Below, in pieces: positions 24,892 to 40,698 of a stretch of 64,000 nt of DNA (position 1 is its first letter; each line of letters opens with the position of its first letter). The stretch is from positions 186,001 through 250,000 of the IMG/VR virus record IMGVR_UViG_3300022698_000267; one strand, given 5' to 3'. Both the position numbers and the translations under genes were made by a program. The notes beneath the pieces were generated by a model. That model searched no databases. It was given only the letters and a program-made list of their open reading frames with translations, and was not told where the DNA came from.

Positions 24892-25917
24892 ATGGCATCA
24901 ATTAGAGAAAAAATGAAGGAAAAGCTCGCCAATCGTGTAAAACAATCTTACAATAGAAGGGAAGGGCAAAATAAGTCCTACTTCAAATCAGACATTGACG
25001 CTAGCTTTTGGAAGGTGTCAGAGGATGATCATATTATTGATATTATCCCTTATCTGGCAGGTGAATTCGATCCATTAACCAAACCTGGCGATCCAACCTA
25101 TGCATTGGAAATTTATGCTCATCAGGGTGTTGGCACAGATGAACGTGCAATGATTTGCATGTTGGAAAATTATGGCAAACCTTGTCCAATCTGTGAGCAT
25201 CGAAAGGAACTGAGAAATCAGTATCCAGATGACAAAGATATGTGGAAACATTTGTATCCCAAACGTAGAATGGTTTACAATATTGTTTGTTACGACTCCA
25301 GAAAAGAAGAGGACAAGGGTGTTCAAATTTGGGAAGTGGCTTGGTGGTTCACTGAAAGGCACTTTGTTAAACTGGCCAGAGAATCGAAGAGACCGGGACA
25401 TGGCGACACTACTTATATTCCTTTCGCTGATCCAGATGATGGAAAAATGATCTCCTTTAGTCGTGAAGGTCAGGGTGCTCAAAATACTTCATTTGTTGCT
25501 CATAAATTTGTTGATAGAGATGTTCCAATTTCCAATGAGATTTTGGATGCAGCACATATCTTGGATGAACTTTTGTATCTACCAACTTACGAAGAAGTTT
25601 ATGAGTTGTATTACCAACAACCCCCTCCTTCTTCTAAAGAGGAAGAAAAACCAGATGGTCCAACTAGGGGAGGTTCTGTGAAACCTGAACCGAAACCTGA
25701 ACCGAAACCTGAACCGAAACCTGAACCGAAACCTGAACCGAAACCTGAACCAAAACCGGAACCGGAACAGAAATCTGAATCTACAACTTCCGATGGTGAA
25801 GAAATTCCTCAATGTCCTGGTGGAGGGGAGTTTGGAGTTCACACTGATGAACTAGATGCTTGTGAGAATTGTAGCCTCTGGCCACCTTGTGCGAAGAAGA
25901 ACGATCAGAACTCATAA
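24892..25917 (+). CDS. gp32-like single-stranded DNA-binding protein with PEPK linker and Cys-rich tail
   Basis: IDIIPY, C...CPICE Zn motif, YNIV, DPDDGKMISFSREG. Confidence 0.75.
   Translation: MASIREKMKEKLANRVKQSYNRREGQNKSYFKSDIDASFWKVSEDDHIIDIIPYLAGEFDPLTKPGDPTYALEIYAHQGVGTDERAMICMLENYGKPCPICEHRKELRNQYPDDKDMWKHLYPKRRMVYNIVCYDSRKEEDKGVQIWEVAWWFTERHFVKLARESKRPGHGDTTYIPFADPDDGKMISFSREGQGAQNTSFVAHKFVDRDVPISNEILDAAHILDELLYLPTYEEVYELYYQQPPPSSKEEEKPDGPTRGGSVKPEPKPEPKPEPKPEPKPEPKPEPKPEPEQKSESTTSDGEEIPQCPGGGEFGVHTDELDACENCSLWPPCAKKNDQNS
25681..25768 (+). repeat. Coding 12-bp tandem repeat (aaacctgaaccg)n encoding (KPEP)n
   Basis: Five perfect units plus degenerate units. Confidence 0.95.
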
Positions 25918-25941: not shown

Positions 25942-25996
25942 AAATGGTGATATGTCTATTTTGCGTATCACCATTTTTATTTACGGGGGAATTACG

Positions 25997-26857
25997 ATGA
26001 AAAAGGCATTATTAGTTGGTATAAACGAATATCAAGGGTCTCCTTTAAAGGGGTGTGTCAACGATTGTTTGTTGATGTATAAAATGCTCACCGAAGAATT
26101 TGATTTTGAAACCAAGGACATTAAACTGCTTACAGACCATGAGGCCACACAAGACAGAATATTGCTTGGTTTGTCAGCTTTGACGAGTGATGTACAACCA
26201 GGCGACACTATATACTTCCATTACAGTGGACATGGTTCTCAGGTGGCAGTAAATGATTGGACAGATAACTTTGAACCTGATGGAAGGGATGAGATTTTAT
26301 GTCCTGTGAATTTAAATTGGGATTTTCCTCTTAGAGACCAGATGGTTGGCAGTTTTTTCAAAGATTTACCAAAGGAAGTAAATGTGGTTGTTGTTTTGGA
26401 TTGTTGTCATTCTGGTACTGGTCTCAGGGCTCCAATTAATTCAAATTTAGATGGACCAAAGTGGTTAGCAAACCGGTTTTTGCCACCTCCCCCATCTAAA
26501 CTTCTTTCTAATCCATTAATTCGAGTTGATGCAGACATGAATTTTATACTTCCAGAACCAACTGAGGATCTTAGATCTATAAAGCGTCCTTTCTTGGTTG
26601 ATACAGTAGAACAGGGACATGTCATTTTAATTACTGGTTGTCAAGACAATCAGACTAGTGCAGACGCATATCTAGCAGGTACTTATCGTGGAGCTTTAAC
26701 TTATTGTCTATACTACGTCCTTTCAAAAAGGAAATTTAACATGAGTTATGAAAAACTAGTCATAGAGATCAATCGTTTGTTAGATAATAAACGATATGAC
26801 CAAAATCCACAATTAGAATGTCTTCCTGAATACAAAAACAGAAAATTTTTGGGATAG
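25997..26857 (+). CDS. Caspase-like peptidase C14 (metacaspase); start moved to ATG 25997
   Basis: KKALLVGIN, LKGCVND, HYSGHG (His), DCCHSG (Cys), QTSADA, GALT, QNPQL. Confidence 0.93.
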   Translation: MKKALLVGINEYQGSPLKGCVNDCLLMYKMLTEEFDFETKDIKLLTDHEATQDRILLGLSALTSDVQPGDTIYFHYSGHGSQVAVNDWTDNFEPDGRDEILCPVNLNWDFPLRDQMVGSFFKDLPKEVNVVVVLDCCHSGTGLRAPINSNLDGPKWLANRFLPPPPSKLLSNPLIRVDADMNFILPEPTEDLRSIKRPFLVDTVEQGHVILITGCQDNQTSADAYLAGTYRGALTYCLYYVLSKRKFNMSYEKLVIEINRLLDNKRYDQNPQLECLPEYKNRKFLG

Positions 26858-28059: not shown

Positions 28060-28521
28060 TTGATTATGGCAGTGTTTGGAATTGGTGCAAGATACGATAC
28101 TCAGTGGGTTCACGAAGATTTTATTAGGAACAATATTGCATGTATCGGTCATGAAGAAGAAAATGCTCCAGAAATATATCGAGATTTTCGAAGGATTACC
28201 AATGGTGATATCATATACATGAAGTCATTGGGTCCTAGATCCGATAAATTGTGTATCATGGGAGTAGGAATTGTTACAAACTCTAAAGTTCAAGAATTTT
28301 ATGAGGGCAAAGGCAAAGATAAAATCTACTGGGGAAATGGTGTTAAGGTCTGGTGGATTTGGACAGAAGAGATTTACTTTAAAACAAATCCAGAACGTGA
28401 TTATCATTGGCATAGGCGATTAGGCACTTTTTATGAAGAATGTAACCCTAAAATTCATCGTAAAGTGATCCGACTTCTTTTAAAACCAAGAGGTCAATGT
28501 CCTAAAGGCTTATTCACCTAG
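28060..28521 (+). CDS. EVE/PUA-like domain protein (resembles N-terminal domains of McrB-type enzymes)
   Basis: NNIACIGH, FRRITNGDIIYMK, IMGVGIV, VKVWW pattern. Confidence 0.4.
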   Translation: MIMAVFGIGARYDTQWVHEDFIRNNIACIGHEEENAPEIYRDFRRITNGDIIYMKSLGPRSDKLCIMGVGIVTNSKVQEFYEGKGKDKIYWGNGVKVWWIWTEEIYFKTNPERDYHWHRRLGTFYEECNPKIHRKVIRLLLKPRGQCPKGLFT

Positions 28522-28532
28522 AACAGTAACTA

Positions 28533-28607
28533 GCCTGTACGTCATTACAACAAATGTAAAGGACGTACAGGCGTTTCCGTGTACAGAGGTATGTCATGGT
28601 ATGGGGA
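28533..28607 (+). repeat. Structured intergenic element, copy 1 (hairpin + conserved tail)
   Basis: gcctgtacgtc/gacgtacaggc 11-bp stem; tail 32/42 identical to 39350-39391. Confidence 0.7.
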
Positions 28608-28637
28608 TAGTTACAAACTCTAATAGAAATGGATTCT

Positions 28638-28647
28638 AATACTAAAA
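28638..28647 (+). promoter_or_regulatory. Putative phage promoter motif AATACTAAAA
   Basis: Intergenic, upstream of the resolvase. Confidence 0.6.
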
Positions 28648-28689
28648 CCTTTTGAAAGAATTTCTTGTAATACTTCAATGGAGTTTCTG

Positions 28690-29253
28690 ATGGCTAAAGG
28701 TGGACAATTTGAACGTGATGTTTGTAAAGAACTTTCATTATGGTGGACAGAAGGGGAAAGAGATGATATATTTTGGAGAACATCAGGTTCCGGTGCAAGG
28801 GCAAAAACTAGATCTAGACAGCAGAATAAAACCACAGCCTATTCATATGGGGATGTAACTTTTACCGATCCAATTGGTCAACCACTCATTGCTAAATGTA
28901 TATTAGAACTTAAAAGAGGTTATGGTAAGTGGTCACCTTTGGATCTGGTGGATAGACCAAAAATGCGTAAAAATGCTAAGAAAATGCCGTTACAAACTCT
29001 GGAATCTTTTATAGAACAGGTTATGGAGGATGTAACAAATGCTGGAGGCTTTCATCATCCCATTTTAATTTGTAGAAGAGATGGAAGAAGGAAGTTTATA
29101 GGAATTACAGACAGATTATTTCGAGCAATGGTAAATATGTTTGGATATCCTGAAACAACAATACTTAGAATTAACACCAATCCATCTTTTCGATTTATGT
29201 CCTACCGATTTTTTCTTGATTGGTGTCATCCAGATTTTTTCAAATCCTGTTAA
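28690..29253 (+). CDS. Holliday junction resolvase (PD-(D/E)xK, Hjc-like); start moved to ATG 28690
   Basis: KGGQFER, RTSGSG, GDV, ELKRGY. Confidence 0.8.
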   Translation: MAKGGQFERDVCKELSLWWTEGERDDIFWRTSGSGARAKTRSRQQNKTTAYSYGDVTFTDPIGQPLIAKCILELKRGYGKWSPLDLVDRPKMRKNAKKMPLQTLESFIEQVMEDVTNAGGFHHPILICRRDGRRKFIGITDRLFRAMVNMFGYPETTILRINTNPSFRFMSYRFFLDWCHPDFFKSC

Positions 29254-29293
29254 AAACATTCATATAATACTTGAAATAACAATAAAATTCTGT

Positions 29294-29303
29294 TATACTA
29301 AAA
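29294..29303 (+). promoter_or_regulatory. Putative phage promoter motif TATACTAAAA
   Basis: Intergenic, upstream of the ligase. Confidence 0.6.
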
Positions 29304-29335
29304 TTAAGTTATAAATATAAATGGAGGTTTTATTG

Positions 29336-31207
29336 ATGGGTATACATGAGAGTGTGTTACAAAATATGAGTGTAGAGCAACTAAGGGAAGAAATTAAAAA
29401 ACACGACAATCTTTATTGGAAAGAACAGAATCCCATTATTTCTGATCCAGATTATGACAGATTAGTCCGAAGACTACAAGAATTAGAACCGGATGACTCT
29501 TTGGTTAGTGAGTTTAAAGAAGAGGAAGTAACTTCTTCTGGAAAAATTGAACATGAAAATCCGATGTTAAGTTTGGATAAAGTCTACACTTCGGAAGAAG
29601 TTTTGAAATGGTGTAGAAAAGTAGCCAGAACAGTTAATGAGTGTTTTCTGCTACAAATTAAGTACGATGGTTGTTCTGCAGAACTTGATAATGACATTCT
29701 TTCCACTAGAGGTGATGGTCATATTGGAGAAGATATTTCAGATAAAATTCCACACATTCGAATTTTGACAGGACCAGATTTTATTCCAGCTATTGGATTT
29801 GAAGGCAAAATTAGGGGAGAATTGGTTTTACAAAAATCTGTTTTCTTACAATACAAAGATATTCTAAAGAGAAAAAGTGGAGAGCCTTATAAAAATTCCA
29901 GAAATGCTTGTGCAGGAATTTTAAATACCGATGATTTTGTCAGTCCTGTGAAAGAACCATTTTTAACCTTTGTTCCATTCGATAATTACACAATGTATAA
30001 GACTCTAAAGCAAATGGAGGATTTTATACTTAGTGGAGAATGGGATAAATTCGTTAAAGATTCTGAAAATCTAGATTATCCAGCAGATGGATTGGTTATA
30101 AAACTGGAAGATCAGTCTTATTGTAAAGAATTGGGAATGACCAAACATCATAGAAAATCAGAACTTGCTTTCAAATTTGCAAATCCGTCAGCTAAAACTG
30201 TTCTTAAAGGTGTGACTCTTAGTTGTGGTAAAGGTTGTGTTACACCAATTGGCAATGTTGAACCTGTTGAACTTGGTGGAGTTACAGTTAGCAATGTAAA
30301 TCTTCACAATTGGAAAAATATCTTGGATATGGGAATCTTCATTGGTGACACTTTGATAGTGGAAAGGGCGGGAGATGTAATCCCTTACGTTGTTGGAGTT
30401 ATTCCAGCTCAACATAGAGTTGCAATAGAAATGGATTACTGTCCAGTTTGTCATGGACCATTGACATATGAAGAACCTGTAAAAGTTTGTAAAAATCCTG
30501 AATGTGGTGGATCTAATCTTAGAAAATTGTCTGATTCCGTTGTACGAATCGGGATTGAAAGATTAGGTCGACCCACCCTTAAAGATATGATGAAAATTAT
30601 AGGTGTTGTAAATTTGATCGATATCTTCCATCTTACAGAAGACGATTTATTAAGACTTCCTAGATTTGGAAAAAGGAAGGCACAGAATCTACTTGAAGAA
30701 ATAGACAAAGTTAAAAAGAATGGAGTGTACGAATGGCAGATTCTTTCAGCCATGAATATTCCTGGAATTGGCAGTACACTAAGTGAAAAAATACTGGAAG
30801 TTTATAATCTCAGAGATCTTATCTTTTTGTGTAGAACAGAACCTGCAATTTCCGAATTAACTTCTTTAGATGGAATAGAGGTTGAAAGAGCCAGTATTTT
30901 AGTAGATGGTGTTTTGGATAATAAAGGATACCTTTTGAAATTGCTTTCTATTCTTCCTATTAAAGAACCGAAGAAGAAAGATTCGAAAGTTGTAAAGATT
31001 TGTTTCAGTGGTAAATTTCCTGATAAAAAGAAAGTATACTACCAGATGTTGGAAGGTAAAAATTTCGAGATTATGGAAAAAGTTGATAAAACCTTGGATA
31101 TTCTAGTTGTAGCAGATTCAACAAAAAATAGTGGTAAGCAGCAAAAAGCTGAAAAATTAGGAATTAAGGTCTTAGAACTAGACTCCCTACTAACTTCAAT
31201 TAAGTAG
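29336..31207 (+). CDS. ligA: NAD-dependent DNA ligase; start moved to ATG 29336
   Basis: PMLSL, KYDG, TRGDG, RGE, DGLVIK, AFKF, Zn finger, HhH and BRCT. Confidence 0.96.
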   Translation: MGIHESVLQNMSVEQLREEIKKHDNLYWKEQNPIISDPDYDRLVRRLQELEPDDSLVSEFKEEEVTSSGKIEHENPMLSLDKVYTSEEVLKWCRKVARTVNECFLLQIKYDGCSAELDNDILSTRGDGHIGEDISDKIPHIRILTGPDFIPAIGFEGKIRGELVLQKSVFLQYKDILKRKSGEPYKNSRNACAGILNTDDFVSPVKEPFLTFVPFDNYTMYKTLKQMEDFILSGEWDKFVKDSENLDYPADGLVIKLEDQSYCKELGMTKHHRKSELAFKFANPSAKTVLKGVTLSCGKGCVTPIGNVEPVELGGVTVSNVNLHNWKNILDMGIFIGDTLIVERAGDVIPYVVGVIPAQHRVAIEMDYCPVCHGPLTYEEPVKVCKNPECGGSNLRKLSDSVVRIGIERLGRPTLKDMMKIIGVVNLIDIFHLTEDDLLRLPRFGKRKAQNLLEEIDKVKKNGVYEWQILSAMNIPGIGSTLSEKILEVYNLRDLIFLCRTEPAISELTSLDGIEVERASILVDGVLDNKGYLLKLLSILPIKEPKKKDSKVVKICFSGKFPDKKKVYYQMLEGKNFEIMEKVDKTLDILVVADSTKNSGKQQKAEKLGIKVLELDSLLTSIK

Positions 31208-31225
31208 ACAAGGAGGTGTTTTTAC

Positions 31226-31561
31226 GTGATTAATTTAGATAAAAATGATGATATCGATATTAAGGTTTCGATTATTGGTTTACCACAGAGTGGGAAGTCC
31301 ACAATAATTTATCTGCTAACAAGAGCATTACAGGATATTGGGATGAAAGTGACTGCTTATGATTCAGAACCATTAAAAAATCATGATTCCAATATTCATT
31401 TGAAATGTGAAGCTCTAAGAGGAAAAAAGATTTCTATTCATACCATAGCTTTGAAAAGCAAGGATTTTAGTAGCATGGCACCGGAAATGCAAGGTGTAGA
31501 GGCTCTTCGTGAAAGAGTTCGAGATTCTAAACGTAGAAGGGGTCCAACTGATACTTTTTAA
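31226..31561 (+). CDS. Mini P-loop protein (paralog A)
   Basis: IIGLPQSGKST Walker A in a 111-aa protein. Confidence 0.65.
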   Translation: MINLDKNDDIDIKVSIIGLPQSGKSTIIYLLTRALQDIGMKVTAYDSEPLKNHDSNIHLKCEALRGKKISIHTIALKSKDFSSMAPEMQGVEALRERVRDSKRRRGPTDTF

Positions 31562-31602
31562 AAAGAACAGGTTACTTTAACTATTGATTCTGGGGGGACA
31601 AA

Positions 31603-32556
31603 TTGGGAAAAAACAATGGTAGAATTCTAAAAATTATTGATGGTTCAGCTAATACTCCTTTGGTTGATGACATCTGTTTCAATTCTAATTTAATTGGTTC
31701 GGAAGTCAAAGATGTTGTTAGTACATTTTCCGATAAAGAAACTCAAATAGAAATCGAAGAAAATATGCGAGGTTGTGATGTATTTGTGATTCAACCTACT
31801 TCTTCACCAGCCAATGAACATTTGATGCAATTATATTTCATACTAGATGCTTTAAAAAGAAGTAATTGTTGGCGGGTTACGGCAGTTATTCCTTACTATG
31901 GTTATGGAAGACAGGATAAAAAGTTGAAGCCCAGAGTTCCAATCTCTGCCAAATCTGTAGCCAGTTTAATTGAGTTTGGTGGAGTTAATAGAGTCCTCAC
32001 TATGGATCTTCATGCTAATCAAATTCAAGGATTTTTTAATTGTCCAGTTGACAATTTATTTGCATCTTCCATATTTTTGCCTTATATGCGTAAGCATGTA
32101 GACCCAAATTCTGTGATAGTATCACCAGATGAAGGTGGAATTGCCAGGGCGGTTCATTACTCTAAAGCTTTAGGACTTCCTGCAGCAATGATTCATAAAT
32201 CAAGACTCATAGCAAATGAAGTTGACAAGATGATACTATTAGGTTCTGTAAGAAATATGCACGCAATCATTATCGATGATATGTGTGATACAGCAACCAC
32301 ACTTTGTAAAGGTGCTGCTATTTTAAAAGATGCTGGAGCATTAAGTGTGGAAGCTTTTGTAACACATGGTGTATTTTCCGGTAAGGCTTACGAAAAAATA
32401 GCAGATTCTGCCTTCGAGGTTGTTAATGTGACAGATTCAATAAAACAGTCGACTATTTACACAGAAAAAATCAATGTCATCTCTTGTGCAGACCTTTTTG
32501 CAAAAGCAATTTTGAATATTCATGATGAAACTTCAGTTAGTTGTCTCTTCGAGTAA
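31603..32556 (+). CDS. prs: Ribose-phosphate pyrophosphokinase
   Basis: FSDKE, PYYGYGRQDKK, DLHANQIQGFF, SPDEGG, DDMCDT. Confidence 0.95.
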   Translation: MGKNNGRILKIIDGSANTPLVDDICFNSNLIGSEVKDVVSTFSDKETQIEIEENMRGCDVFVIQPTSSPANEHLMQLYFILDALKRSNCWRVTAVIPYYGYGRQDKKLKPRVPISAKSVASLIEFGGVNRVLTMDLHANQIQGFFNCPVDNLFASSIFLPYMRKHVDPNSVIVSPDEGGIARAVHYSKALGLPAAMIHKSRLIANEVDKMILLGSVRNMHAIIIDDMCDTATTLCKGAAILKDAGALSVEAFVTHGVFSGKAYEKIADSAFEVVNVTDSIKQSTIYTEKINVISCADLFAKAILNIHDETSVSCLFE

Positions 32557-32561
32557 CAAAA

Positions 32562-32571
32562 AATACTAAAA
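32562..32571 (+). promoter_or_regulatory. Putative phage promoter motif AATACTAAAA
   Basis: Intergenic, upstream of mini P-loop B. Confidence 0.6.
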
Positions 32572-32602
32572 TTTATAGAAATTAATTTCAATGGAGGGTA
32601 GC

Positions 32603-32854
32603 ATGGGGAAAAAGGAGTTACAAATACTGATAATTGGAGAAGCTGGTAGAGGTAAATCTACAATGGCTAGAATTATTCAACATGCTTTACAAGATCGTGA
32701 GTTTGATGATGTAACTATTAAAGATGAAATTGTAGAAGGTGTTCCAGATTCTTTCAATGAGGACGTCAGTATGAATCTTCGTTGTGAGGCTATAAAGGAT
32801 CTTTCAGTACTCATTAAAACCAAACAGTCGGTGAAAGGAGGATTCAATGTTTAG
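32603..32854 (+). CDS. Mini P-loop protein (paralog B); start moved to ATG 32603
   Basis: IIGEAGRGKST; aligns with paralog A. Confidence 0.65.
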   Translation: MGKKELQILIIGEAGRGKSTMARIIQHALQDREFDDVTIKDEIVEGVPDSFNEDVSMNLRCEAIKDLSVLIKTKQSVKGGFNV

Positions 32855-33518
32855 AAAATTTGTTACAAGCAATACATTTATAGCTATAGTTTTAACTGTT
32901 ATAGCTATGGGAGTCTTTGCAGTAATGGATTTTTTCCCACGATTGAGTGCTTCAGTTTCTGAGAATTCTATTGAGAGACCTGACATGCTCTCAGAGGTTT
33001 TTTTTGAATCAGAGGTTCCATTTAGGCAAATTGGACCTCTTAGACAACCAGAAACGGATGATCAGAAAATAATACGTTTTTCCTCTATTATAGAAAAAAG
33101 GCAGCCTCGTTTGGATCCAGCTATAGCAGAACAGATTGCTAAGTGTACATTGATATCTTCCAAACGTTATGGATTCCCTCCGGAAATGATTCTTGCTTTG
33201 ATGAAAAGGGAATCTACATTTATTCCAACTTTAGTTTCTAGTGCAGGTTGTAAAGGTTTGATGCAAGTGTACCCTGAAAAGCATCTGAAGAAATTAAAAA
33301 GAAGAGGGATTTCTAAAGATTCACCAAAGATTTTTTACATCGCTCCAAATATTGATATTGGATGCGAAATTCTTAGGGAGTATTATGATTCTGCAAAAGG
33401 GAATGTTAAACAAGCCCTAAAACAGTATGTTGGTGGGAAACATGATACGTATCTAACCGATGTCACTGTGGAATTTACTTCCTTAATGTTGGAAAAGTTT
33501 GATTCTTCCAACATGTAA
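32847..33518 (+). CDS. SLT-family lytic transglycosylase with N-terminal membrane anchor
   Basis: RES catalytic Glu, GLMQV, NIDIG, AL..Y.GG. Confidence 0.88.
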   Translation: MFRKFVTSNTFIAIVLTVIAMGVFAVMDFFPRLSASVSENSIERPDMLSEVFFESEVPFRQIGPLRQPETDDQKIIRFSSIIEKRQPRLDPAIAEQIAKCTLISSKRYGFPPEMILALMKRESTFIPTLVSSAGCKGLMQVYPEKHLKKLKRRGISKDSPKIFYIAPNIDIGCEILREYYDSAKGNVKQALKQYVGGKHDTYLTDVTVEFTSLMLEKFDSSNM

Positions 33519-33530
33519 TAGGAGAAAATC

Positions 33531-33848
33531 ATGAATACCGATCGTATGACAAAAGATGAGAAGTCAATTCTTCTATATCTAGAATCCTGTGCAACCGATG
33601 ATATTGGTAGAATAGATTCTAGAAAGATTAATGATATCGATCTGGAAATAATGAAAAAATGGAATAAAAGTGGTTTTATTTCATTTGGAAGATTAAGATC
33701 TGCCGATATTAAATCTGGGAGTTTCAAAGCCACATGGGTTAAACTGTCTGATGAAGCTTGGGAAACTGCTTTCAAATTGCGAAAGGAAAGAGCTTTAAGG
33801 ATGGAGAAGAATTACCCTTATGAAAGGAAAGAGATAGGTGTTCTATAA
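33531..33848 (+). CDS. Hypothetical protein
   Basis: 105 aa, GGAG RBS. Confidence 0.65.
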   Translation: MNTDRMTKDEKSILLYLESCATDDIGRIDSRKINDIDLEIMKKWNKSGFISFGRLRSADIKSGSFKATWVKLSDEAWETAFKLRKERALRMEKNYPYERKEIGVL

Positions 33849-34320
33849 CACACCAGAAAAATTGGAACCTCTACTTTGGGCTGTGGAACAGACATGGGAA
33901 ATAACTCAAAGAGAGGATTATCATCCCGAAATTTATGTGCATCTGCACCTTCTACAATGTTTCTATATAGCTGTTAAGGAAACCAGAGACATAGATATTA
34001 TAGTTGCTGCCCTAGTTCATGATGTTGGAAAAGTTGGTGGTAGCCATGGACATGAAAAACGTTCTGTTGATATGCTGGAATGTCACTGTTCTGAGAAGAC
34101 CCTTTGGTTAATCGAACAACATATTAAAATTTGGTCTCTTTTAACAGGACAAATGAAGAAAAGGTCAAAGGTTCAGAATCTAATGTCACATCCATGGTTT
34201 CTAGATTTAATACTTCTGGCTAGAATTGATAAGATGGGAAGGAATTTGGGCAGGACAGTTTACTATGATAAAGAAGAGATTATCAACACCATCCTAGAAG
34301 CAAAAATCCATAATTCTTAG
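33838..34320 (+). CDS. HD-domain phosphohydrolase
   Basis: YHPE..VHLH and AALVHDVGK. Confidence 0.8.
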   Translation: MFYNTPEKLEPLLWAVEQTWEITQREDYHPEIYVHLHLLQCFYIAVKETRDIDIIVAALVHDVGKVGGSHGHEKRSVDMLECHCSEKTLWLIEQHIKIWSLLTGQMKKRSKVQNLMSHPWFLDLILLARIDKMGRNLGRTVYYDKEEIINTILEAKIHNS

Positions 34321-34322
34321 TG

Positions 34323-34364
34323 AATTCAAAAAATATTTGAATTAAATTCAAAAAAATACTATAT
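34323..34364 (+). promoter_or_regulatory. Alternating AATTCAAA/TTTGAATT repeats followed by AATACTATAT motif
   Basis: aattcaaa 34323-30, tttgaatt 34336-43, aattcaaa 34345-52, motif 34355-64. Confidence 0.5.
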
Positions 34365-34390
34365 TTCTATAAAATAAATGGAGAATAAGA

Positions 34391-35575
34391 ATGTTAACTT
34401 ATCGAGATAAACCAAAAGACTATAAAATATTTGGAATTCCAGGTGTGGATTTTGAGTACGAAGCTCTTGAACAGATGAATAAAGTTATGTCCATTCCTGT
34501 TAGCTTAGAAGGGGCTGTAATGCCTGACGCTCACGTTGGATATGGTATGCCTATTGGTGGAGTAGCTGCTTTAAAGGATGCAGTAAGTCCCAATTTCGTG
34601 GGATATGATATAGCTTGTCGAATGACTCTTACTATTTTGGATATTGACATTCCAGAACTTTTAAAGAATCGAGAACTTATAGCTGGACATATGTTAGCTT
34701 CTTCAAGTTTTGGGGTAGGATCTATTTCTAATCGAAGAACAGATCATCCAGTTATGTATTCTCCTCTATGGAAAGAGCTTTCACATCTTAAAGAGTTGCA
34801 GTCTTTGGCTGAGGAACAATTGGGAACCAGTGGATCTGGAAATCATTTCTTCAATGCTATGATAGGTCAGGTAGTAAATGAAGCAGATTGGTTACCTTTG
34901 AATGTTGGTGACAAATTTGTTGCTATTATGACACATTCTGGAAGTCGTGGAGTTGGTCATAAATTAGCTACTCATTATATTAAATTAGCAAAACAAGAAA
35001 CTAAGGCTATTGCCAAAGGAATTCCAAGAGATTATGAGTGGTTAGATATCAGAAAAGATTCTGGTCGTGAATATTTGAAAGTAATGTCTTTAATGGGTGA
35101 ATACGCGGAAGCAAATCATCAGATTATTCACGATTCTTTTCTGAAAAAGTCAGGATTAAAACAGATTGTTCGTTATCAAAATCATCATAATTTTGCTTGG
35201 GAAGGACCTAATGGAATAGTTATACATCGTAAGGGTGCAACCCCTGCTCAATTAGGACAGATTGGAATAATTCCAGGTTCAAGTGGAACAGCTTCTTATC
35301 TTGTTGAAGGAAGAGGAGAGGTCACTGGTTTATGTTCCTCAAGTCATGGTGCTGGTAGAAAGTTCAGTAGGAATGAAGCAAAGGCAAAGTATAAAAAGCA
35401 TATTGTCGATGCTCATATGAAAGATTACGATATTCTTGGTATTGGGATAAACAAAGATGAAACTTTGATGGCTTATAAGGATATTGAGCACGTTATGGAT
35501 TTACAAAAAGATCTTGTTTCTCCAGTAGCAAGAATGCTTCCAAAGGTTGTCATCATGGCTGGAAAAAGAAATTAG
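34391..35575 (+). CDS. rtcB: RtcB RNA ligase
   Basis: MPDAHVGYG.PIG, DIAC, GSGNHF, HSGSR, HHN, HRKGAT, SHGAGR, AYKDI. Confidence 0.95.
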   Translation: MLTYRDKPKDYKIFGIPGVDFEYEALEQMNKVMSIPVSLEGAVMPDAHVGYGMPIGGVAALKDAVSPNFVGYDIACRMTLTILDIDIPELLKNRELIAGHMLASSSFGVGSISNRRTDHPVMYSPLWKELSHLKELQSLAEEQLGTSGSGNHFFNAMIGQVVNEADWLPLNVGDKFVAIMTHSGSRGVGHKLATHYIKLAKQETKAIAKGIPRDYEWLDIRKDSGREYLKVMSLMGEYAEANHQIIHDSFLKKSGLKQIVRYQNHHNFAWEGPNGIVIHRKGATPAQLGQIGIIPGSSGTASYLVEGRGEVTGLCSSSHGAGRKFSRNEAKAKYKKHIVDAHMKDYDILGIGINKDETLMAYKDIEHVMDLQKDLVSPVARMLPKVVIMAGKRN

Positions 35576-35612
35576 ATTTTTTTTCAATAATTACCCGATT
35601 AAGTAAGTGAAA

Positions 35613-35622
35613 AATACTATAT
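35613..35622 (+). promoter_or_regulatory. Putative phage promoter motif AATACTATAT
   Basis: Intergenic, upstream of the vWA/PurA-like module. Confidence 0.5.
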
Positions 35623-35676
35623 ATAGAATATAGATTTTTTATTTACTATTTTAAATGTAAACGAAAGGAGAGAATC

Positions 35677-36060
35677 ATGGAAGAAAAAGACAAAAATGGA
35701 GCAGTAGCAACCAGCAATCCCTCAGCAGTAGTGGAGGTTCCCGGTGCCTTTATGTATTCCTTGAAAAGGAACAACAAGCAGATTCGGGATGACAGGGCCA
35801 TGGCCATCGCTGAGGACACTCAGCTTATCTACAAGCGGACCATGGAAGACCTGGAAGTCGCATTGAAGAGAATGCGACGGGAACAGGAAAATATGCTGGA
35901 TTTGTCACCCACCGACGCCCGGAGCCTGGTTTTGGCAAGCGATTTCGATTCCAAGGAATACGTCAACAAAGACGTGGAATTGGGAGTAAAAATCCGCAAT
36001 ACCGAAATCAAATTGGAAATTGCCAAGGCCCGATATGAATACCTGTTCGGCGAAGTGTAA
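35677..36060 (+). CDS. Coiled-coil hypothetical protein of the vWA/PurA-like module (GC ~50%)
   Basis: 127 aa; AAAGGAG RBS; GC visibly higher than the flanks. Confidence 0.8.
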   Translation: MEEKDKNGAVATSNPSAVVEVPGAFMYSLKRNNKQIRDDRAMAIAEDTQLIYKRTMEDLEVALKRMRREQENMLDLSPTDARSLVLASDFDSKEYVNKDVELGVKIRNTEIKLEIAKARYEYLFGEV

Positions 36061-36064
36061 ACCA

Positions 36065-36208
36065 ATGAAACCTTTTCGCAACATTCTCATAAAGTTCAAA
36101 GAGTTTGTTGCGAAAAAGTGGTTTCAATTTCGTTGTCCACATCAACATTTGCATGTATGGCCTCATATGTATGTATGTGATCGGTGTGGAAAAACTTTTA
36201 AAGATTAA
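36065..36208 (+). CDS. Small Zn-ribbon-like protein (47 aa); start moved to ATG 36065
   Basis: CPH...CDRC. Confidence 0.45.
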   Translation: MKPFRNILIKFKEFVAKKWFQFRCPHQHLHVWPHMYVCDRCGKTFKD

Positions 36209-36222
36209 AAAGGAGGATTAAA

Positions 36223-37092
36223 ATGGGTGGTGGAACATATTCATCAACAGCCAGAGCTACCAGGGCATTTCATTCTGGATATCATACGAAGTCGGCCCAA
36301 GAAATTTTTACCCAAAGAAACATCAACAATGCCATGAGCCCCTATGGTCTTGGGATTCGGGAATCCAGGGATTCAGAAGAGCATCCAAAATCATATCCGA
36401 TTATACTAGGTCTTGACGTAACTGGATCGATGGGAAGCGTTCCTCATTTTCTGGTAAAGGAAGGTCTTCCGAAAATCATGGATGGTATTATTGAAGCCGG
36501 AATTCCTGATCCTCAGGTTTTGTTTTTGGGGATTGGTGATCATCAAGTCGATGATGCTCCAATTCAAGTCGGCCAATTTGAAAGTTCGGATGAACTTCTG
36601 GATAAATGGTTGACCGATATTTATTTGGAAGGTGGGGGTGGTGCAAATGCCGGTGAAAGTTACTTTTTGGCCTGGTACGTTGCAGCCAAACACACTGAAA
36701 CGGACAGTTTTATAAAACGTCAACAGAAGGGCATCCTTTTCACAATCGGTGATGAGCCAGATCTGCGTACTTTTTCTGGAAAGTCTGCAAAAAATATATT
36801 TGGTGCTGGTGAATATGCCAAAGAGTATTCGGACTTTGCATTGTTGGAAGAAGCAATGTTGACTTACAATGTATTCCATATCAATATCAATGAAACCAGT
36901 TCCGGTTCCAGAAGAATGGTCCAAGATGGATGGAAACAAATTCTGGCAGACAACGCTTTATTTGCGAATCGGAGGGAAGATGTTGTTGGAATCATTACCG
37001 ATAAGATTGTCGAAATTTACAAGGCCACAGAAACGGCGCCGACCATTGTACCGGAAGAGTACGTCGAAACATCAGTAGAGGAAATGCTGTGA
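36223..37092 (+). CDS. vWA-domain protein
   Basis: MIDAS-like DVTGSMG, GGGG, IGDE; MGGG start. Confidence 0.85.
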   Translation: MGGGTYSSTARATRAFHSGYHTKSAQEIFTQRNINNAMSPYGLGIRESRDSEEHPKSYPIILGLDVTGSMGSVPHFLVKEGLPKIMDGIIEAGIPDPQVLFLGIGDHQVDDAPIQVGQFESSDELLDKWLTDIYLEGGGGANAGESYFLAWYVAAKHTETDSFIKRQQKGILFTIGDEPDLRTFSGKSAKNIFGAGEYAKEYSDFALLEEAMLTYNVFHININETSSGSRRMVQDGWKQILADNALFANRREDVVGIITDKIVEIYKATETAPTIVPEEYVETSVEEML

Positions 37093-38240
37093 TATCAAAA
37101 GCCGTTATTGATTGCGGATTTGGAGATGCTGGCAAAGGAAAAGTTGTAAGTTACCTTTGTCAGCATTTCAGTAATCCTTTGGTAATTCGTTTTTCTGGTG
37201 GACAGCAGGCTGCTCATCATGTCGTGCTGCCTGACGGTCCAGACCACGTTTTTTCCAATTTTGGTAGTGGTACCCTCCAGGGAGTTCCCACCTATTGGGC
37301 TAAATATTGTACAGTGGATCCAGTAGGAATTTTAAATGAATTAGACGTTCTGAAAGAAAAAGGCATTGAACCGAAATTATACATTGATAGTCTTTGTCCT
37401 GTGACAACTCCGTTTGAGAAGTATTTGAATGTTGTTCAAAATCGGAGAAACGAACATGGCAGTTGTCAAGTCGGTGTTGGACCAACTTATCAACGAGAAG
37501 AGGACTTTTTTCATTTGCAGTTCAGGGATCTTTTCAATCCTACTGTTCTCAAAATCAAATTGGATATGTTTCAGAAACATTACTATCCAATGTCCAGATA
37601 TGCCCATTCTACATTACAGGCTGATGATTTTAAAAAAGCTGAAATTGAATTTTTCAGTTGTGTAGAAGAGTTGGTAAATTGTCCTAATGTAATTCGTGTT
37701 AGTCATTTTCCAAGTGGCTATGAAGATTACATTTTTGAATCTTCTCAAGGTCTTCTTTTGGATCAACATATTGGTTTTTTTCCTCATGTATCTAGGGGTA
37801 ACTTTGGAACTAAAAATATACTGAATATGGGGTTTAATAGTTTTTCAGTAACTTTGGTTACAAGGGCATATCAGACCCGTCATGGAAATGGACCAATGAC
37901 CAATGAGGACATTCCTCATAAAATAAAGGTAAATCCGTATGAAGAAAATCCCGATGACAATGCTCAAGGCAAATTTAGGATTTCTTTACTAGATTTGGAT
38001 TTACTAAAGTATTCTATATACAGTGACCCTTACATTTTGAGTTTTAGAACTGAAGTAGATTTAATAATTACCTGTTTGGACTTGATTGATGAAGATTACA
38101 GACTTACAGTAGATGGGAAAGTTTGTGAATTTAAAAATGAAAGGGATTTTGTTCAGTGTATAAAGTCTGAACTTGCGATTGACAAAGTGCGTCTCAGTAG
38201 GACACCATTTCCAGAAGTGGAGCTTTTCGACTCTTTATAA
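37089..38240 (+). CDS. Adenylosuccinate-synthetase-like (PurA-like) protein
   Basis: GFGDAGKG, RFSGGQQAAH, GVG, ESSQGLLLD, TRHGNGP. Confidence 0.85.
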   Translation: MISKAVIDCGFGDAGKGKVVSYLCQHFSNPLVIRFSGGQQAAHHVVLPDGPDHVFSNFGSGTLQGVPTYWAKYCTVDPVGILNELDVLKEKGIEPKLYIDSLCPVTTPFEKYLNVVQNRRNEHGSCQVGVGPTYQREEDFFHLQFRDLFNPTVLKIKLDMFQKHYYPMSRYAHSTLQADDFKKAEIEFFSCVEELVNCPNVIRVSHFPSGYEDYIFESSQGLLLDQHIGFFPHVSRGNFGTKNILNMGFNSFSVTLVTRAYQTRHGNGPMTNEDIPHKIKVNPYEENPDDNAQGKFRISLLDLDLLKYSIYSDPYILSFRTEVDLIITCLDLIDEDYRLTVDGKVCEFKNERDFVQCIKSELAIDKVRLSRTPFPEVELFDSL

Positions 38241-38254
38241 GGAGGGGGTTTTTA

Positions 38255-38407
38255 ATGGCGACAGCATGTGATTTCACATGGGATTTTTTAATCAAGGAAC
38301 TTAAACCAATCTTTGGGAATAGAAAAAATTGGAAAAGGTTCTATGCTGTAGCTTCACGATTACATTGGAAAGCATACACCTCCACTCTTTTTCTAACCAA
38401 AATATAA
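38255..38407 (+). CDS. Small protein (50 aa; not in the ORF track)
   Basis: Hand-translated MATACDFTWDF...LTKI*; strong AAGGAGG RBS. Confidence 0.55.
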   Translation: MATACDFTWDFLIKELKPIFGNRKNWKRFYAVASRLHWKAYTSTLFLTKI

Positions 38408-38426
38408 AATAATAGAGGATTTTACT

Positions 38427-38735: not shown

Positions 38736-38747
38736 AAGGATGATAAA

Positions 38748-38966
38748 ATGTCACATGGAGCTAGATTTCATAAATGCACTTGTCCAAGGTGTGGAGAAGA
38801 ACACAAAAGCAGAATTCATTGGACCTCCAAAAACAAACCCAGAATTTATTGCAAAAGTTGTAAAGGAATTGTGGAAAGAGCAGGAAGTTCTATGGGACCT
38901 TCCAATTATATTACACATGGAAGGATGATTCATTCAGGAAATAGAACAGTATTGGATTCAAAATGA
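38748..38966 (+). CDS. Small Zn-ribbon protein
   Basis: CPRC...CKSC. Confidence 0.5.
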   Translation: MSHGARFHKCTCPRCGEEHKSRIHWTSKNKPRIYCKSCKGIVERAGSSMGPSNYITHGRMIHSGNRTVLDSK

Positions 38967-39301
38967 GAAAGAAACCACTTCTAACATTGACAAAGAAAGA
39001 TTTTCGAATAGACACTTTTACTTCTGGTGGAAAAGGTGGACAACACCAAAATAAAGTGGCTACTGGAGTTCGAATTACTCATATTGAATCTGGGATTTCA
39101 GCAGAAGCAAGGGATACCAGGAGCCAAAAACGAAATAAAGATAATGCTTTTCGCCGTCTTGTGAATAAACCTGAATTTAAGAATTGGTTAAAAGTTGAAA
39201 GTATTCACAAGACGGAATTGGAAAAAAAGGTTGATGAACTGATGTCTCCTGAGAATCTTCTAATTGAAGTTCAAAAAGGAAACGATTGGGTCTCATTGTA
39301 A
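38963..39301 (+). CDS. Stand-alone class I release-factor GGQ domain (ArfB/PrfH-like peptidyl-tRNA hydrolase)
   Basis: SGGKGGQHQNK, VRITH, RSQKRNK. Confidence 0.9.
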   Translation: MRKKPLLTLTKKDFRIDTFTSGGKGGQHQNKVATGVRITHIESGISAEARDTRSQKRNKDNAFRRLVNKPEFKNWLKVESIHKTELEKKVDELMSPENLLIEVQKGNDWVSL

Positions 39302-39314
39302 GTGCTTAACTTTC

Positions 39315-39391
39315 ACGTCTGTACATCTTTCTGCCAACGTAGAAGGTGTTACAGGCGTTTCTGTGTATGAAGGTATATTCCTGTATTGGGA
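39315..39391 (+). repeat. Structured intergenic element, copy 2
   Basis: acgtctgta/tacaggcgt stem with inner extension; conserved tail. Confidence 0.7.
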
Positions 39392-39469
39392 ATATGAATT
39401 ATAGATTACAAAGAATATTTGACACTAGAGTGAACATGAAAATCTCAAAAATTTTATTCGAAGGATGAA

Positions 39470-39487
39470 TATACTAATATACTAATA
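39470..39487 (+). promoter_or_regulatory. Tandem putative promoter motif TATACTAATA x2
   Basis: Intergenic, upstream of pncB. Confidence 0.55.
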
Positions 39488-39513
39488 TTATTTAAACTTT
39501 TCTGGAGATTTTT

Positions 39514-40689
39514 ATGAAATCCTTTATTAAAAGCAAATTAGACAACGATGCCTACATTTTTACCATGGCACAAGCTATCCTCCATAATTATCCAAATGTG
39601 GAAGTTGAATATGAATATGTTTGTCGTAACTTCGATGAGACTTTTGGAAAATATGAAATAGATCCTCATAAACTTAGGAAACTCATTATTCCACAATTGG
39701 ATCATTTAGCAGGATTATCAATGTCTTCATCCCAAAAAAGTTGGATGAATAATATTAGATATTACAAACCAGACTTTGTGCAATTCGTTTACGATTTGAA
39801 ATTAAAGCCACAATTGTATATTACCTGCGTTGTTTGGGATGATCAATTAAAGATTAATATCAAAGGTCCATGGATACAAACTATTTGGTTTGAAGTTCCT
39901 GTTTTGGCTATAATTAGTGAGAGTTATACTAGATTAATACATGAACGTGGGAATACAGAGGCTCTCTATAAAAATTTGGAAGATAAAATAAATTTGTATC
40001 GTGGAAAGTATAGTCATTTTTTCTTTGGTGACATGGGTACCAGAAGAAGAGATAGTTTCGAATTTCAACATCATGTTTGTAAAAGACTGAAAGGGATTCG
40101 AACTTTCACTGGAACTTCTAATATGCATATAGCTCATGCTTTAAGACTTAAAGCTCTTGGAACAATTGCACACCAATGGTTTCAAGCTCATCAACAACTT
40201 GCTCCATTAAAAGATAGCCAAAAAGTAGCTTTAGAAATTTGGGCTCAAGAATTTCGTGGAGATCTTGGAATAGCATTGTCAGATACTTTAGGATTCGATC
40301 AATTCCTAATTGATTTTGATATGTACTTCGCAAAATTATTCGATGGGTGTCGACATGATTCAGGTGATCCATATGAATGGACCGAGAAACTTATTCAACA
40401 CTATCAACAATTAGGAATTGATCCTAGAACTAAAAAAGCAATTTACAGCGATGGATTAAATTTTGAAGAGGCCAATAAGATATACGAAGCTTTTCGAGGA
40501 TCAATTCAAACTTCATTTGGAATAGGAACCTGGTTAACCAACGATGGCATCATTACACCTTTACAAATTGTCATTAAAATGATTAGATGTGCTGGTGGTC
40601 CGGTTGCTAAGATATCAGATAATCCCATTAAGAAGATTTGTGTTGATGAAAATTACTATAAATATCTTTGCAATACCTTTGTCAAATAG
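39514..40689 (+). CDS. pncB: Nicotinate phosphoribosyltransferase
   Basis: DMGTRRR, GTSN, GTIAHQWFQAHQQ, RHDSGDP, SDGL, FGIGT, VAKISD. Confidence 0.95.
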   Translation: MKSFIKSKLDNDAYIFTMAQAILHNYPNVEVEYEYVCRNFDETFGKYEIDPHKLRKLIIPQLDHLAGLSMSSSQKSWMNNIRYYKPDFVQFVYDLKLKPQLYITCVVWDDQLKINIKGPWIQTIWFEVPVLAIISESYTRLIHERGNTEALYKNLEDKINLYRGKYSHFFFGDMGTRRRDSFEFQHHVCKRLKGIRTFTGTSNMHIAHALRLKALGTIAHQWFQAHQQLAPLKDSQKVALEIWAQEFRGDLGIALSDTLGFDQFLIDFDMYFAKLFDGCRHDSGDPYEWTEKLIQHYQQLGIDPRTKKAIYSDGLNFEEANKIYEAFRGSIQTSFGIGTWLTNDGIITPLQIVIKMIRCAGGPVAKISDNPIKKICVDENYYKYLCNTFVK

Positions 40690-40698
40690 GAGAAAATA

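What the first reader, a model, noticed from the sequence alone, without database searches (positions are those of the whole stretch)
28533..28607. Structured intergenic element occurring twice, 11 kb apart, each time just after an accessory gene (copy 1)
Seen: an 11-bp stem (gcctgtacgtc/gacgtacaggc) with an inner 5-bp stem, then tacaggcgtttccgtgtacagaggtatgtcatggtatgggga, which is 32/42 identical to 39350-39391. The hairpins keep their pairing although the sequences differ. There is no U-tract, so this is not a standard terminator. Both copies lie between a stop codon and the next WATACTAWA motif. Inference: an unknown cis-regulatory RNA, processing site, or cassette recombination site.
Basis: seen in the sequence. 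Interest (0 to 1): 0.65.

Follow-up and report, generated by a model that had tools for sequence, protein, structure and literature searches.

The report
Conserved hairpin-plus-tail phage intergenic element
A roughly 75-120-base structured sequence that occurs twice in this uncultivated 274-kb phage, and also in a few related phages, always sits just after the last gene of a gene block and most likely acts as a terminator-derived "end of transcript" signal; it is real and conserved, but a variation on a familiar theme rather than a new kind of system.

Summary
Copy 1 (28533-28607) and copy 2 (39315-39391) are the only two copies in the 273,563-bp phage genome, are far beyond chance, and match no Rfam family. 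Searching contigs that carry the neighbouring RF-1-domain gene turned up homologues in related uncultivated phages. One (L069 group, four independent assemblies, 81-84% identical) lies between convergent genes. Another (L068) keeps the hairpin but follows it with a run of U, like a canonical intrinsic terminator. All four versions keep an -18 to -23 kcal/mol hairpin despite 8-16 changes (simulation p <= 0.02). G-U pairs favour folding of the + (mRNA) strand. The element is better conserved than third codon positions of adjacent genes (0.48-0.57). It always follows the last gene of a co-directional block, in a hyperplastic accessory region between RecA and SbcC homologues. Sequence blocks on either side of an invariant core give conflicting groupings, which points to recombination between element types. 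Best reading (about 0.5): a terminator-derived transcript 3'-end or insulator module whose U tract has been replaced by a conserved tail. As a by-product it marks cassette boundaries, much like T4-type PeSLs. No activity was tested, and covariation statistics on four sequences are not significant.

The parts
28526..28532 (+). Copy 1, 5' strand of the closing helix P0 (GUAACUA), pairs with 28608-28614
   Evidence: MFE fold. Analogous short closing helices can be drawn in copy 2 and L069 from direct reading of the sequence, but in different registers, so this is weak.
28533..28572 (+). Copy 1, long hairpin P1: 11 bp, internal loop, 5 bp, 5-nt loop; -22.8 kcal/mol
   Evidence: The lower 7 bp are invariant in all four family members.
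28573..28607 (+). Copy 1, conserved tail: G, UUUCC, then the weak imperfect helix P2. Invariant blocks are GGCGTTTC, TGT, AGGTAT, GTAT and GGG.
   Evidence: The element overall is 84% identical to L069.
28608..28616 (+). Copy 1, 3' strand of P0 and the shared TTACAA end of the homology
39296..39301 (+). Copy 2, possible 5' strand of P0 (UUGUAA, overlaps the stop codon), pairs with 39406-39411
   Evidence: Direct reading; weak
39315..39358 (+). Copy 2, hairpin P1: 9 bp, bulge, 6 bp, bulge, 4 bp, 4-nt loop; three G-U pairs; -21.9 kcal/mol
39359..39391 (+). Copy 2, conserved tail / P2
39406..39411 (+). Copy 2, TTACAA end of the homology with L069 and possible 3' strand of P0
   Evidence: the copy 2-L069 alignment runs to 39411
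28060..28521 (+). Upstream gene of copy 1: 153-aa ORF with no family match, variably present after RecA in relatives
38963..39301 (+). Upstream gene of copy 2: 112-aa RF-1-domain protein; my reading from general knowledge is an ArfB/peptidyl-tRNA-hydrolase-like protein. It is the last gene of a block that is syntenic in L068 and L069.
28638..28646 (+). Promoter-like motif AATACTAAA downstream of copy 1. The motif recurs 20-100 nt upstream of many genes and has no -35 element.
39470..39487 (+). Two overlapping TATACTAAT motifs downstream of copy 2
   Evidence: compared
28690..29253 (+). Downstream gene of copy 1: PDDEXK_15 / RusA-like nuclease. In relative L073 it follows RecA directly.
39514..40689 (+). 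Downstream gene of copy 2: nicotinate/nicotinamide phosphoribosyltransferase family

Best explanation
The element is a terminator-derived 3'-end module of the sense transcript. RNA polymerase transcribing a co-directional gene block makes the long P1 hairpin 11-13 nt after the last stop codon (about 48 nt in L068). P1, with its G+C-rich base and the following GUUUC, then does one or both of two things. It may stop or pause the polymerase, as a weak or factor-assisted terminator. It may also form the stable 3' hairpin that remains after read-through RNA is trimmed, protecting the upstream message. Either way the upstream unit is insulated from the next one, which has its own AATACTAAA-type promoter 30-80 nt further on. 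In this lineage the usual U tract has been replaced by a conserved 35-45-nt tail. The tail can fold into a weak second helix (P2) that pairs the UUUC with a downstream GGGA, and it probably tunes the event or binds a factor. Shown here: the sequence, the fold, its conservation and its position. Inferred: termination, stabilisation and any role of the tail. Because short conserved sequences at gene-block ends are good crossover points, the two copies also mark, and over evolutionary time have taken part in, cassette exchange in this hyperplastic region.
For: (1) Position. In all four distinct occurrences the element directly follows the last gene of a + strand block. In the L069 group it fills the 109-nt gap between convergent genes. 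(2) The L068 orthologue has the same hairpin followed by UUUUAUUUU, with an A-rich run upstream. (3) P1 stays at -18 to -23 kcal/mol in all four versions, which differ by 8-16 changes. Random mutation of equal extent gives -6 to -10, and the fraction of simulations as stable is 0-0.024 in all 12 comparisons. Direct reading shows compensatory changes in lower-stem pairs (C-G to U-A in L068, G-C to A-U in copy 2) and different apical stems in each version. (4) Strand. All wobble changes give G-U on the + strand, and the minus strand of copy 2 folds no better than shuffles. (5) Constraint. The element is 81-84% identical between this phage and L069 over 82-91 nt, while adjacent genes are 66-74% identical overall and 0.48-0.57 at third positions. 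(6) Promoter-like motifs lie downstream of both window copies. (7) No coding periodicity, no tRNA and no Rfam family.
Against: The window copies and L069 have only 4-5 U in the 8 nt after the stem. The genome's clear terminators have G+C stems with real T tracts, and the simple scan flags none of the family, not even L068, whose stem is interrupted. So efficient intrinsic termination is doubtful. The tail is as conserved as the hairpin, which a plain terminator does not explain. If P2 forms, it sequesters the UUUC. Formal pair counting on four sequences is not better than shuffles, because the modelled lower stem is invariant and P2 varies on one side only. No RNA data could be obtained.
Confidence: 0.5

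Rival explanations
1. It is an endonucleolytic processing site in long read-through transcripts, of the kind phage T7 uses for RNase III. Polymerase does not stop. A host or phage RNase cuts in or beside P1/P2, separating the messages and leaving a protective hairpin.
For: P1 is 16-19 bp with internal loops or bulges and lacks a U tract. The genes on both sides lie on one strand in a 38-kb co-directional array. The conserved tail could hold the cleavage or recognition sequence. The whole 90-120-nt region of copy 1 folds as one closed domain (z -5.3).
Against: The L068 orthologue looks like an ordinary terminator. In L069 the element ends a convergent pair, where no message lies downstream to be separated. 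Cleavage could not be tested. This reading overlaps the best explanation in outcome (3'-end formation) and differs only in mechanism.
Confidence: 0.2
2. Its primary role is at the DNA level, as a cassette recombination site. The two direct repeats and their relatives in other phages serve as homology patches, or sites for a recombinase, through which accessory genes are swapped, as proposed for PeSLs in T4-type phages.
For: Both copies sit where synteny with relatives breaks, inside a RecA-to-SbcC interval that holds about 12 kb of accessory genes absent from relatives L026 and L035. Each phage has different genes downstream of the element. Informative sites cluster in blocks with conflicting groupings on either side of the invariant core: the apical block groups copy1+L068 against copy2+L069, and the tail block groups copy1+L069 against copy2+L068. 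The two window copies are each closer to L069 than to each other.
Against: The longest identical run between the two window copies is 12 nt and identity is 77%, which is poor for homologous recombination now. No recombinase gene lies beside either copy. G-U pairs and hairpin maintenance point to selection on RNA, not on duplex DNA. There are only two copies, whereas PeSL-type cassettes are numerous. Boundary position is also expected for any terminator.
Confidence: 0.13
3. It is a leader, attenuator or riboswitch-like RNA controlling the downstream genes, which are NAD-related in both cases (NAD-dependent ligase after copy 1, NAPRTase after copy 2).
For: Both copies lie upstream of NAD-linked genes. 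The RNA is structured and conserved.
Against: L069 has no downstream co-directional gene. L068 is followed by a histidine-kinase-like gene. A promoter-like motif lies between the element and the gene in both window copies, and the spacing to the start codon is 83 versus 123 nt with no terminator or SD-sequestering platform. NAPRTase relatives in other phages have no such element upstream. There is no match to the NAD+ or any other riboswitch family in Rfam.
Confidence: 0.04
4. It is a double-stranded DNA binding site for a phage protein (replication, partition, packaging or transcription factor), with the inverted repeat as half-sites and GTAT-N6-GTAT in the tail as further contacts.
For: Copy 1 has a perfect 11-bp inverted repeat. 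The tail carries GTAT repeated at 10-nt spacing in copy 1, copy 2 and L069. The tail's sequence conservation exceeds what its weak fold explains.
Against: The inverted repeat is imperfect at the DNA level in copy 2 and L069 (G-T and C-C oppositions, a bulge), while RNA pairing is kept. The apical stem changes sequence yet keeps pairing, which a half-site model does not need. Its position after stop codons fits RNA 3' ends.
Confidence: 0.08
5. It is an independent small RNA gene or a decaying duplication without function.
For: There are only two copies and a narrow phylogenetic range.
Against: No promoter-like motif precedes it and no terminator follows it. Conservation above that of neighbouring coding sequence, seen across four independent assemblies of another phage, argues against decay.
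Confidence: 0.05

Closest known systems
Rho-independent (intrinsic) transcription terminators of bacteria and phages
   Same: A G+C-based hairpin placed 11-13 nt after the stop codon of the last gene of a unit (about 48 nt in L068), on the sense strand. The L068 orthologue has the full hairpin-plus-U-run anatomy with an upstream A run.
   Different: In the window copies and L069 the U run is reduced to UUU followed by C and mixed bases, and a conserved 35-45-nt tail follows. The stem is long (16-19 bp) and interrupted. Activity is untested.
PeSL / PmSL composite terminator-promoter cassettes of T4-type phages (PMC2839356, PMC4122927)
   Same: Both are short conserved intergenic stem-loop modules in hyperplastic regions, lying next to genes that differ between related phages and associated with recombinational shuffling. 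Here the element lies at synteny breaks and shows a mosaic signal.
   Different: PeSLs are defined by a strong sigma-70-like early promoter joined to the stem-loop and occur in many copies. This element has no such promoter within it, sits at variable distance from a different promoter-like motif, and has only two copies. The genome does carry a separate, truly PeSL-like family of about 45 early-promoter cassettes elsewhere. This phage is not T4-type: it has a family A polymerase, and the best cultured relative is 25% identical.
RNase III processing sites of phage T7 early and late mRNAs (established knowledge, not tested here)
   Same: Irregular hairpins of about 20 bp without U tracts, lying between genes of co-directional polycistronic transcripts and leaving a protective 3' hairpin.
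   Different: No sequence similarity and no cleavage data. One family member lies at a convergent gene junction, and one has a U tract.
nut / put sites of lambdoid phages (two structured RNA sites per genome acting on RNA polymerase; established knowledge)
   Same: Two copies per genome of a structured sense-strand RNA with conserved structure and partly diverged sequence.
   Different: nut and put sites lie just downstream of early promoters and upstream of terminators. This element lies at the ends of gene blocks and upstream of promoter-like motifs. No N/Q-type or put-type features were found.

Membership tests
Intrinsic (Rho-independent) terminator | Stable G+C-rich hairpin on the transcribed strand | tested here: met
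   P1 is -18 to -23 kcal/mol in all four versions, with base pairs G-C, C-G, C-G at the foot.
Intrinsic (Rho-independent) terminator | Run of U (about 5 or more in 8) directly after the stem | tested here: not met
   Copy 1 has 4/8, copy 2 has 5/8 interrupted, and L069 has 5/8 after a leading G. None is flagged by the scan. Met only in the L068 orthologue by direct reading (7/8), though the simple scan misses that interrupted stem too.
Intrinsic (Rho-independent) terminator | Location at the 3' end of a transcription unit | tested here: met
   It follows the last gene of a co-directional block in 4/4 cases, including one convergent junction.
Intrinsic (Rho-independent) terminator | Stops RNA polymerase in vitro or in vivo | not testable with these tools
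   No sequencing run was listed.
PeSL (T4-type promoter-early stem-loop cassette) | Stem-loop joined to a near-consensus sigma-70 early promoter | tested here: not met
   No TTGACA-N17-TATAAT-type site lies in or beside either copy on the + strand. The downstream motif lacks a -35 element and lies 31 versus 79 nt away.
PeSL (T4-type promoter-early stem-loop cassette) | Many copies, concentrated in hyperplastic regions | tested here: not met
   Exactly two copies, although both lie in a hyperplastic region.
PeSL (T4-type promoter-early stem-loop cassette) | Lies at the ends of indels or replacements between related phages | tested here: met
   Gene content differs immediately downstream of the element in every relative. 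The 153-aa ORF plus copy 1 is absent from L073, where RecA and PDDEXK are 40 nt apart.
Any Rfam 15 family (including riboswitches, ribozymes, CRISPR repeats, known phage RNAs) | Score at or above the family's gathering threshold | tested here: not met
   There are no matches at gathering thresholds in the window. The best sub-threshold matches are E 0.9-9 to unrelated families.
Riboswitch / 5' leader | Sits in the 5' UTR of the regulated gene with an expression platform (terminator or SD sequestration) | tested here: not met
   A promoter-like motif lies between the element and the gene. No platform is present. L069 has no downstream gene.
RNase III-type processing site | About two turns of imperfect double-stranded RNA in an intercistronic region | tested here: inconclusive
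   16-19 bp with bulges, intercistronic in three of four cases. Cleavage is not testable here.
Diversity-generating retroelement TR/VR pair | Differences confined to adenines of one copy; reverse transcriptase nearby | tested here: not met
   The ten mismatches in the tail are of mixed types. No RT domain occurs in the genes scanned between and around the copies.

The most novel reading that the evidence does not exclude
A previously undescribed structured 3'-UTR RNA of a clade of uncultivated jumbo phages. In it an ancestral intrinsic terminator lost its U tract and gained a tail that is under purifying selection comparable to that on the neighbouring coding sequence. The result would be a conditional, factor-controlled terminator/anti-terminator or processing switch that lets the phage decide when accessory cassettes (NAD salvage, RNA repair) are read through from upstream or expressed from their own promoters.
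Probability: 0.2. Interest if true: 0.6.

Novelty: new variant of a known kind. Interest (0 to 1): 0.35.

Why it matters
If the reading is right, the element shows how a phage with long one-directional gene arrays partitions them into expression units, and how such punctuation marks double as seams along which accessory genes are exchanged. Here those genes include NAD-dependent ligase, PRPP synthetase, RtcB, an ArfB-like factor and NAPRTase. The contrast between the L068 form (hairpin plus U run) and the window/L069 form (hairpin plus conserved tail) is a natural experiment on what can replace a U tract. That contrast would interest people who study termination and phage gene regulation. It is not a new class of system, and its narrow distribution (one small clade, four distinct sequences) limits its immediate reach.

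Tried and rejected
- **Rfam.** Gathering thresholds on the window and E-value mode on both loci gave nothing meaningful. No tRNA or tmRNA was found.
- **Exact-pattern scans.** The core and tail were scanned in IMG/VR, JGI metagenomes and GTDB genomes. These returned only chance hits, or re-found the L070 contig.
- **Relatives reached through RecA and NAPRTase** (about 40-50% aa identity): no element.
- **Relatives reached through the 153-aa ORF** (52-59% identity): the ORF is there, the element is not.
- **48 IMG/VR loci with more distant RF-1 homologues:** none carries the element.
- **Coding hypotheses.** Mismatches show no 3-nt periodicity. The 54-aa minus-strand ORF over copy 1 has no counterpart at copy 2. 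Its tblastn hit to L069 lies in a different frame from the neighbouring convergent gene, and I read it as nucleotide similarity.
- **Tail as a sigma-70 promoter, or as a diverged copy of the genome's early-promoter cassette:** hexamers and spacing do not fit. Only a GGT(A)TGGGGA-like motif is shared.
- **Alternative pairing of the tail with the 5' arm (attenuator):** not conserved in copy 2.
- **DGR, integrase or invertase site:** no supporting genes or mismatch pattern.
- **d'Aubenton-Carafa-type terminator index.** I recalled the formula from memory. It scored L068 positive and the other three negative, but it also mis-scored two obvious terminators as I delimited them, so I use only the U counts from that call.
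- **Pair-count statistics on the four-sequence alignment:** not significant.

Full report
**Setting.** The window is bases 186,001-250,000 of a 273,563-bp IMG/VR virus record (about 97% complete, G+C about 34%). Its family A DNA polymerase is at most 25% identical to that of any cultured phage in the phage collection, and blastn finds nothing there. It is therefore an uncultivated jumbo phage. Genes from about 8 to 46 kb of the window lie on the + strand.

**The observation.**
- Copy 1 has an 11-bp stem (28533-28543 with 28562-28572) and an inner 5-bp stem.
- The 42 nt from 28566 are 32/42 identical to 39350-39391.
- A stringent local alignment puts the homology at 28535-28607 versus 39319-39391.
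- The 18-nt core occurs twice in the window against 0.04 expected.
- nhmmer and blastn over the whole genome find no third copy. A covariance model of the two copies (R1) also finds none, run with default filters and with filters off over all 273 kb.
- Both + strands fold better than shuffles (z -5.3 and -3.45). The minus strand of copy 2 does not (z -1.3), because three of its pairs are G-U.
- No Rfam family matches.

**Transcription signals in this genome.** The genome has near-consensus sigma-70-type promoters (TTGACA-N17-TATACT). It also has a second motif, AATACTAAA, without a -35 element, lying 20-100 nt upstream of many genes. Clear terminators in this genome have G+C stems followed by T runs. 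The two window copies lack such a run (4-5 U in 8) and are not flagged by the simple scan.

**Relatives that lack the element.**
- Exact-pattern scans of public collections gave only chance hits.
- Relatives reached through RecA or NAPRTase are too distant and lack the element.
- Homologues of the 153-aa ORF upstream of copy 1 (52-59% identity) sit after RecA in three contigs, but no element follows them.

**Relatives that carry it.** The RF-1-domain protein upstream of copy 2 has closer homologues (73-76% identity). Their contigs do carry the element.
- **L069 group.** L069 2422-2500 scores 71 bits (E 5e-14), and the same sequence appears in three further independent assemblies (L070-L072). 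The element lies after RF-1 plus one extra ORF, and fills the 109-nt gap before the stop codon of a convergent gene.
- **L068.** L068 6823-6903 scores 25.7 bits (E 6e-4). The element lies after RF-1 plus one extra ORF and before a kinase-like gene.
- Forty-eight IMG/VR loci with more distant RF-1 homologues have no element. The family is therefore confined to a small clade.

**What the four versions show.**
1. **The hairpin is maintained.**
   - The four P1 sequences differ by 8-16 substitutions and indels, yet all fold at -18 to -23 kcal/mol.
   - Random mutation of the same extent gives -6 to -10, and reaches the observed value in at most 2.4% of trials in all 12 comparisons (earlier version).
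   - Read directly, lower-stem pair 8 is C-G in copy 1 and U-A in L068, and pair 9 is G-C in copy 1 and A-U in copy 2.
   - The apical stems use different sequences and registers.
2. **The lower stem is invariant and P2 varies only by wobble.** The lower seven pairs and the following GCGTTT are the same in all four. The proposed P2 varies only through wobble-compatible single changes in the three tail-bearing versions, and it is not kept in L068. Formal pair counts are therefore no better than shuffles. I do not claim statistical covariation for P2 or for the short closing helix P0.
3. **L068 looks like an ordinary terminator.** It has the same hairpin followed by UUUUAUUUU, with an A-rich run upstream. 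That is a canonical, probably bidirectional, intrinsic terminator. The simple scan misses it because the stem is interrupted.
4. **The element is under constraint.** Between this phage and L069 it is 81-84% identical over 82-91 nt. The adjacent genes are 66-74% identical overall and only 0.48-0.57 at third codon positions. The element, tail included, is thus constrained about as strongly as the neighbouring coding sequence.

**Context.**
- More distant relatives (L026, L035) have RecA, one or two genes, then SbcC-like genes.
- L073 has RecA-PDDEXK-ligase-PRPP synthetase, with 40 nt between RecA and PDDEXK.
- In this phage the RecA-to-SbcC interval holds the following, in order:
  - the 153-aa ORF, then copy 1;
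  - PDDEXK, NAD-dependent ligase, PRPP synthetase and SLT;
  - HD, RtcB and an adenylosuccinate-synthetase-like gene;
  - small ORFs and RF-1, then copy 2;
  - NAPRTase and a 157-aa ORF.
- Copy 2 is the orthologous position, at the end of the w38427-w38748-RF-1 block shared with L068 and L069. Copy 1 is an extra copy after a variably present ORF.
- Whatever follows the element differs in every phage. It therefore marks module boundaries in a hyperplastic region.

**History of the copies.** Copy 1 and copy 2 are each closer to L069 (84% and 81%) than to each other (77%). Parsimony-informative sites also cluster. Four adjacent apical sites group copy 1 with L068 and copy 2 with L069. Four tail sites within a five-column stretch group copy 1 with L069 and copy 2 with L068. 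The two blocks lie on either side of the invariant core. This mosaic is best explained by recombination or gene conversion between two old element types. It fits the idea that such conserved punctuation acts as a crossover point. With four sequences it is suggestive, not proven.

**Interpretation.** Four lines of evidence point to a terminator-derived 3'-end or insulator module acting in the sense RNA:
- its position after the last gene of a block, in all four cases;
- the convergent-junction case in L069;
- the U-run orthologue in L068;
- the strand bias of G-U pairs.

The missing U run and the strongly conserved tail show that the window form is not a plain intrinsic terminator. It may be weak or factor-assisted, or it may act through processing and 3' protection, as with RNase III-type sites. 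I cannot separate these without RNA data, and no run was listed. A leader or riboswitch for downstream NAD-related genes is largely excluded by the L069 context and by the promoter-like motif that intervenes. A purely DNA-level recombination or protein-binding site is possible but less likely, given the selection for RNA pairing.

**Comparison with known systems.** The closest described concept is the PeSL/PmSL composite terminator-promoter cassette of T4-type phages (PMC2839356; PMC4122927). The element shares with PeSLs its location in hyperplastic regions, its association with gene-content differences and its evidence of recombination. It fails the defining features of an attached sigma-70-like early promoter and of high copy number. 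Interestingly, this genome has a separate family that does look PeSL-like (see noticed in passing). I file the finding as a new variant of a known kind: a terminator-type intergenic punctuation element with an unusual conserved tail.

**Limits.**
- Only four distinct sequences are available.
- There are no expression data and the host is unknown.
- All functional statements are inferred.
- The d'Aubenton-Carafa formula was recalled from memory and is not relied on.

Noticed in passing
Genome 111-157 kb (outside the window) and window 29251-29309: There is a family of about 45 intergenic cassettes. Each has a near-perfect sigma-70-type promoter (TTCAAAWAGTACTTGACA, 17-nt spacer, TATACT or TATAAT) and a conserved transcribed leader (TTAAGTGGTTGGGGA). 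Many are preceded by a G+C hairpin plus T run, so they look truly PeSL-like. One diverged copy sits just upstream of the NAD-dependent ligase gene in the window. The leader motif GGTTGGGGA resembles the GGTATGGGGA at the end of the element's tail.
   Followed up: partly
window 28060-41172: The RecA-to-SbcC interval is a hyperplastic region packed with auxiliary genes. These are NAD-dependent DNA ligase, PRPP synthetase, an SLT transglycosylase, an HD-domain protein, RtcB RNA ligase, an adenylosuccinate-synthetase-like protein, an ArfB-like RF-1-domain protein and a NAPRTase-family enzyme. Together they suggest NAD salvage and RNA or translation repair, possibly as counter-defence. Distant relatives have RecA and SbcC-like genes almost adjacent.
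   Followed up: partly
window 36066-36195: Two strong adjacent hairpins (together about -47 kcal/mol for the 162-nt gap) without T runs lie between a 127-aa and a 289-aa ORF. They have no similarity to the studied element.
   Followed up: no
window 25952-26857: A caspase-like Peptidase_C14 gene lies immediately upstream of the RecA/UvsX-like gene. The pair is syntenic in relative L048.
   Followed up: no
window 25668-25780 and 14510-14632: In-frame 12-nt (GAAACCTGAACC) and 27-nt tandem repeats lie inside + strand ORFs (Lys/Pro/Glu-rich linkers). The first is in the gene whose homologue in L073 has a weak gp32 match.
   Followed up: no
window 5600-5665: An exact 33-bp tandem duplication.
   Followed up: no
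Genome 1-2,500 and 255,000-273,563 (partly beyond the window): Both genome ends carry extensive diverged repeats (65-85% identity, up to 1.5 kb) rich in CTTGAA/CTACTT units, on both strands. They probably belong to very large repetitive structural or fibre genes, including one ORF of about 10.9 kb.
   Followed up: no
window 28495-28521: The C-terminal tail of the 153-aa ORF is 3-5 residues longer than, and unrelated to, the tails of its homologues in L048, L050 and L051. Its last codons show faint similarity to the sequence just upstream of copy 2. This suggests that arrival of copy 1 remodelled the 3' end of the gene.
   Followed up: partly
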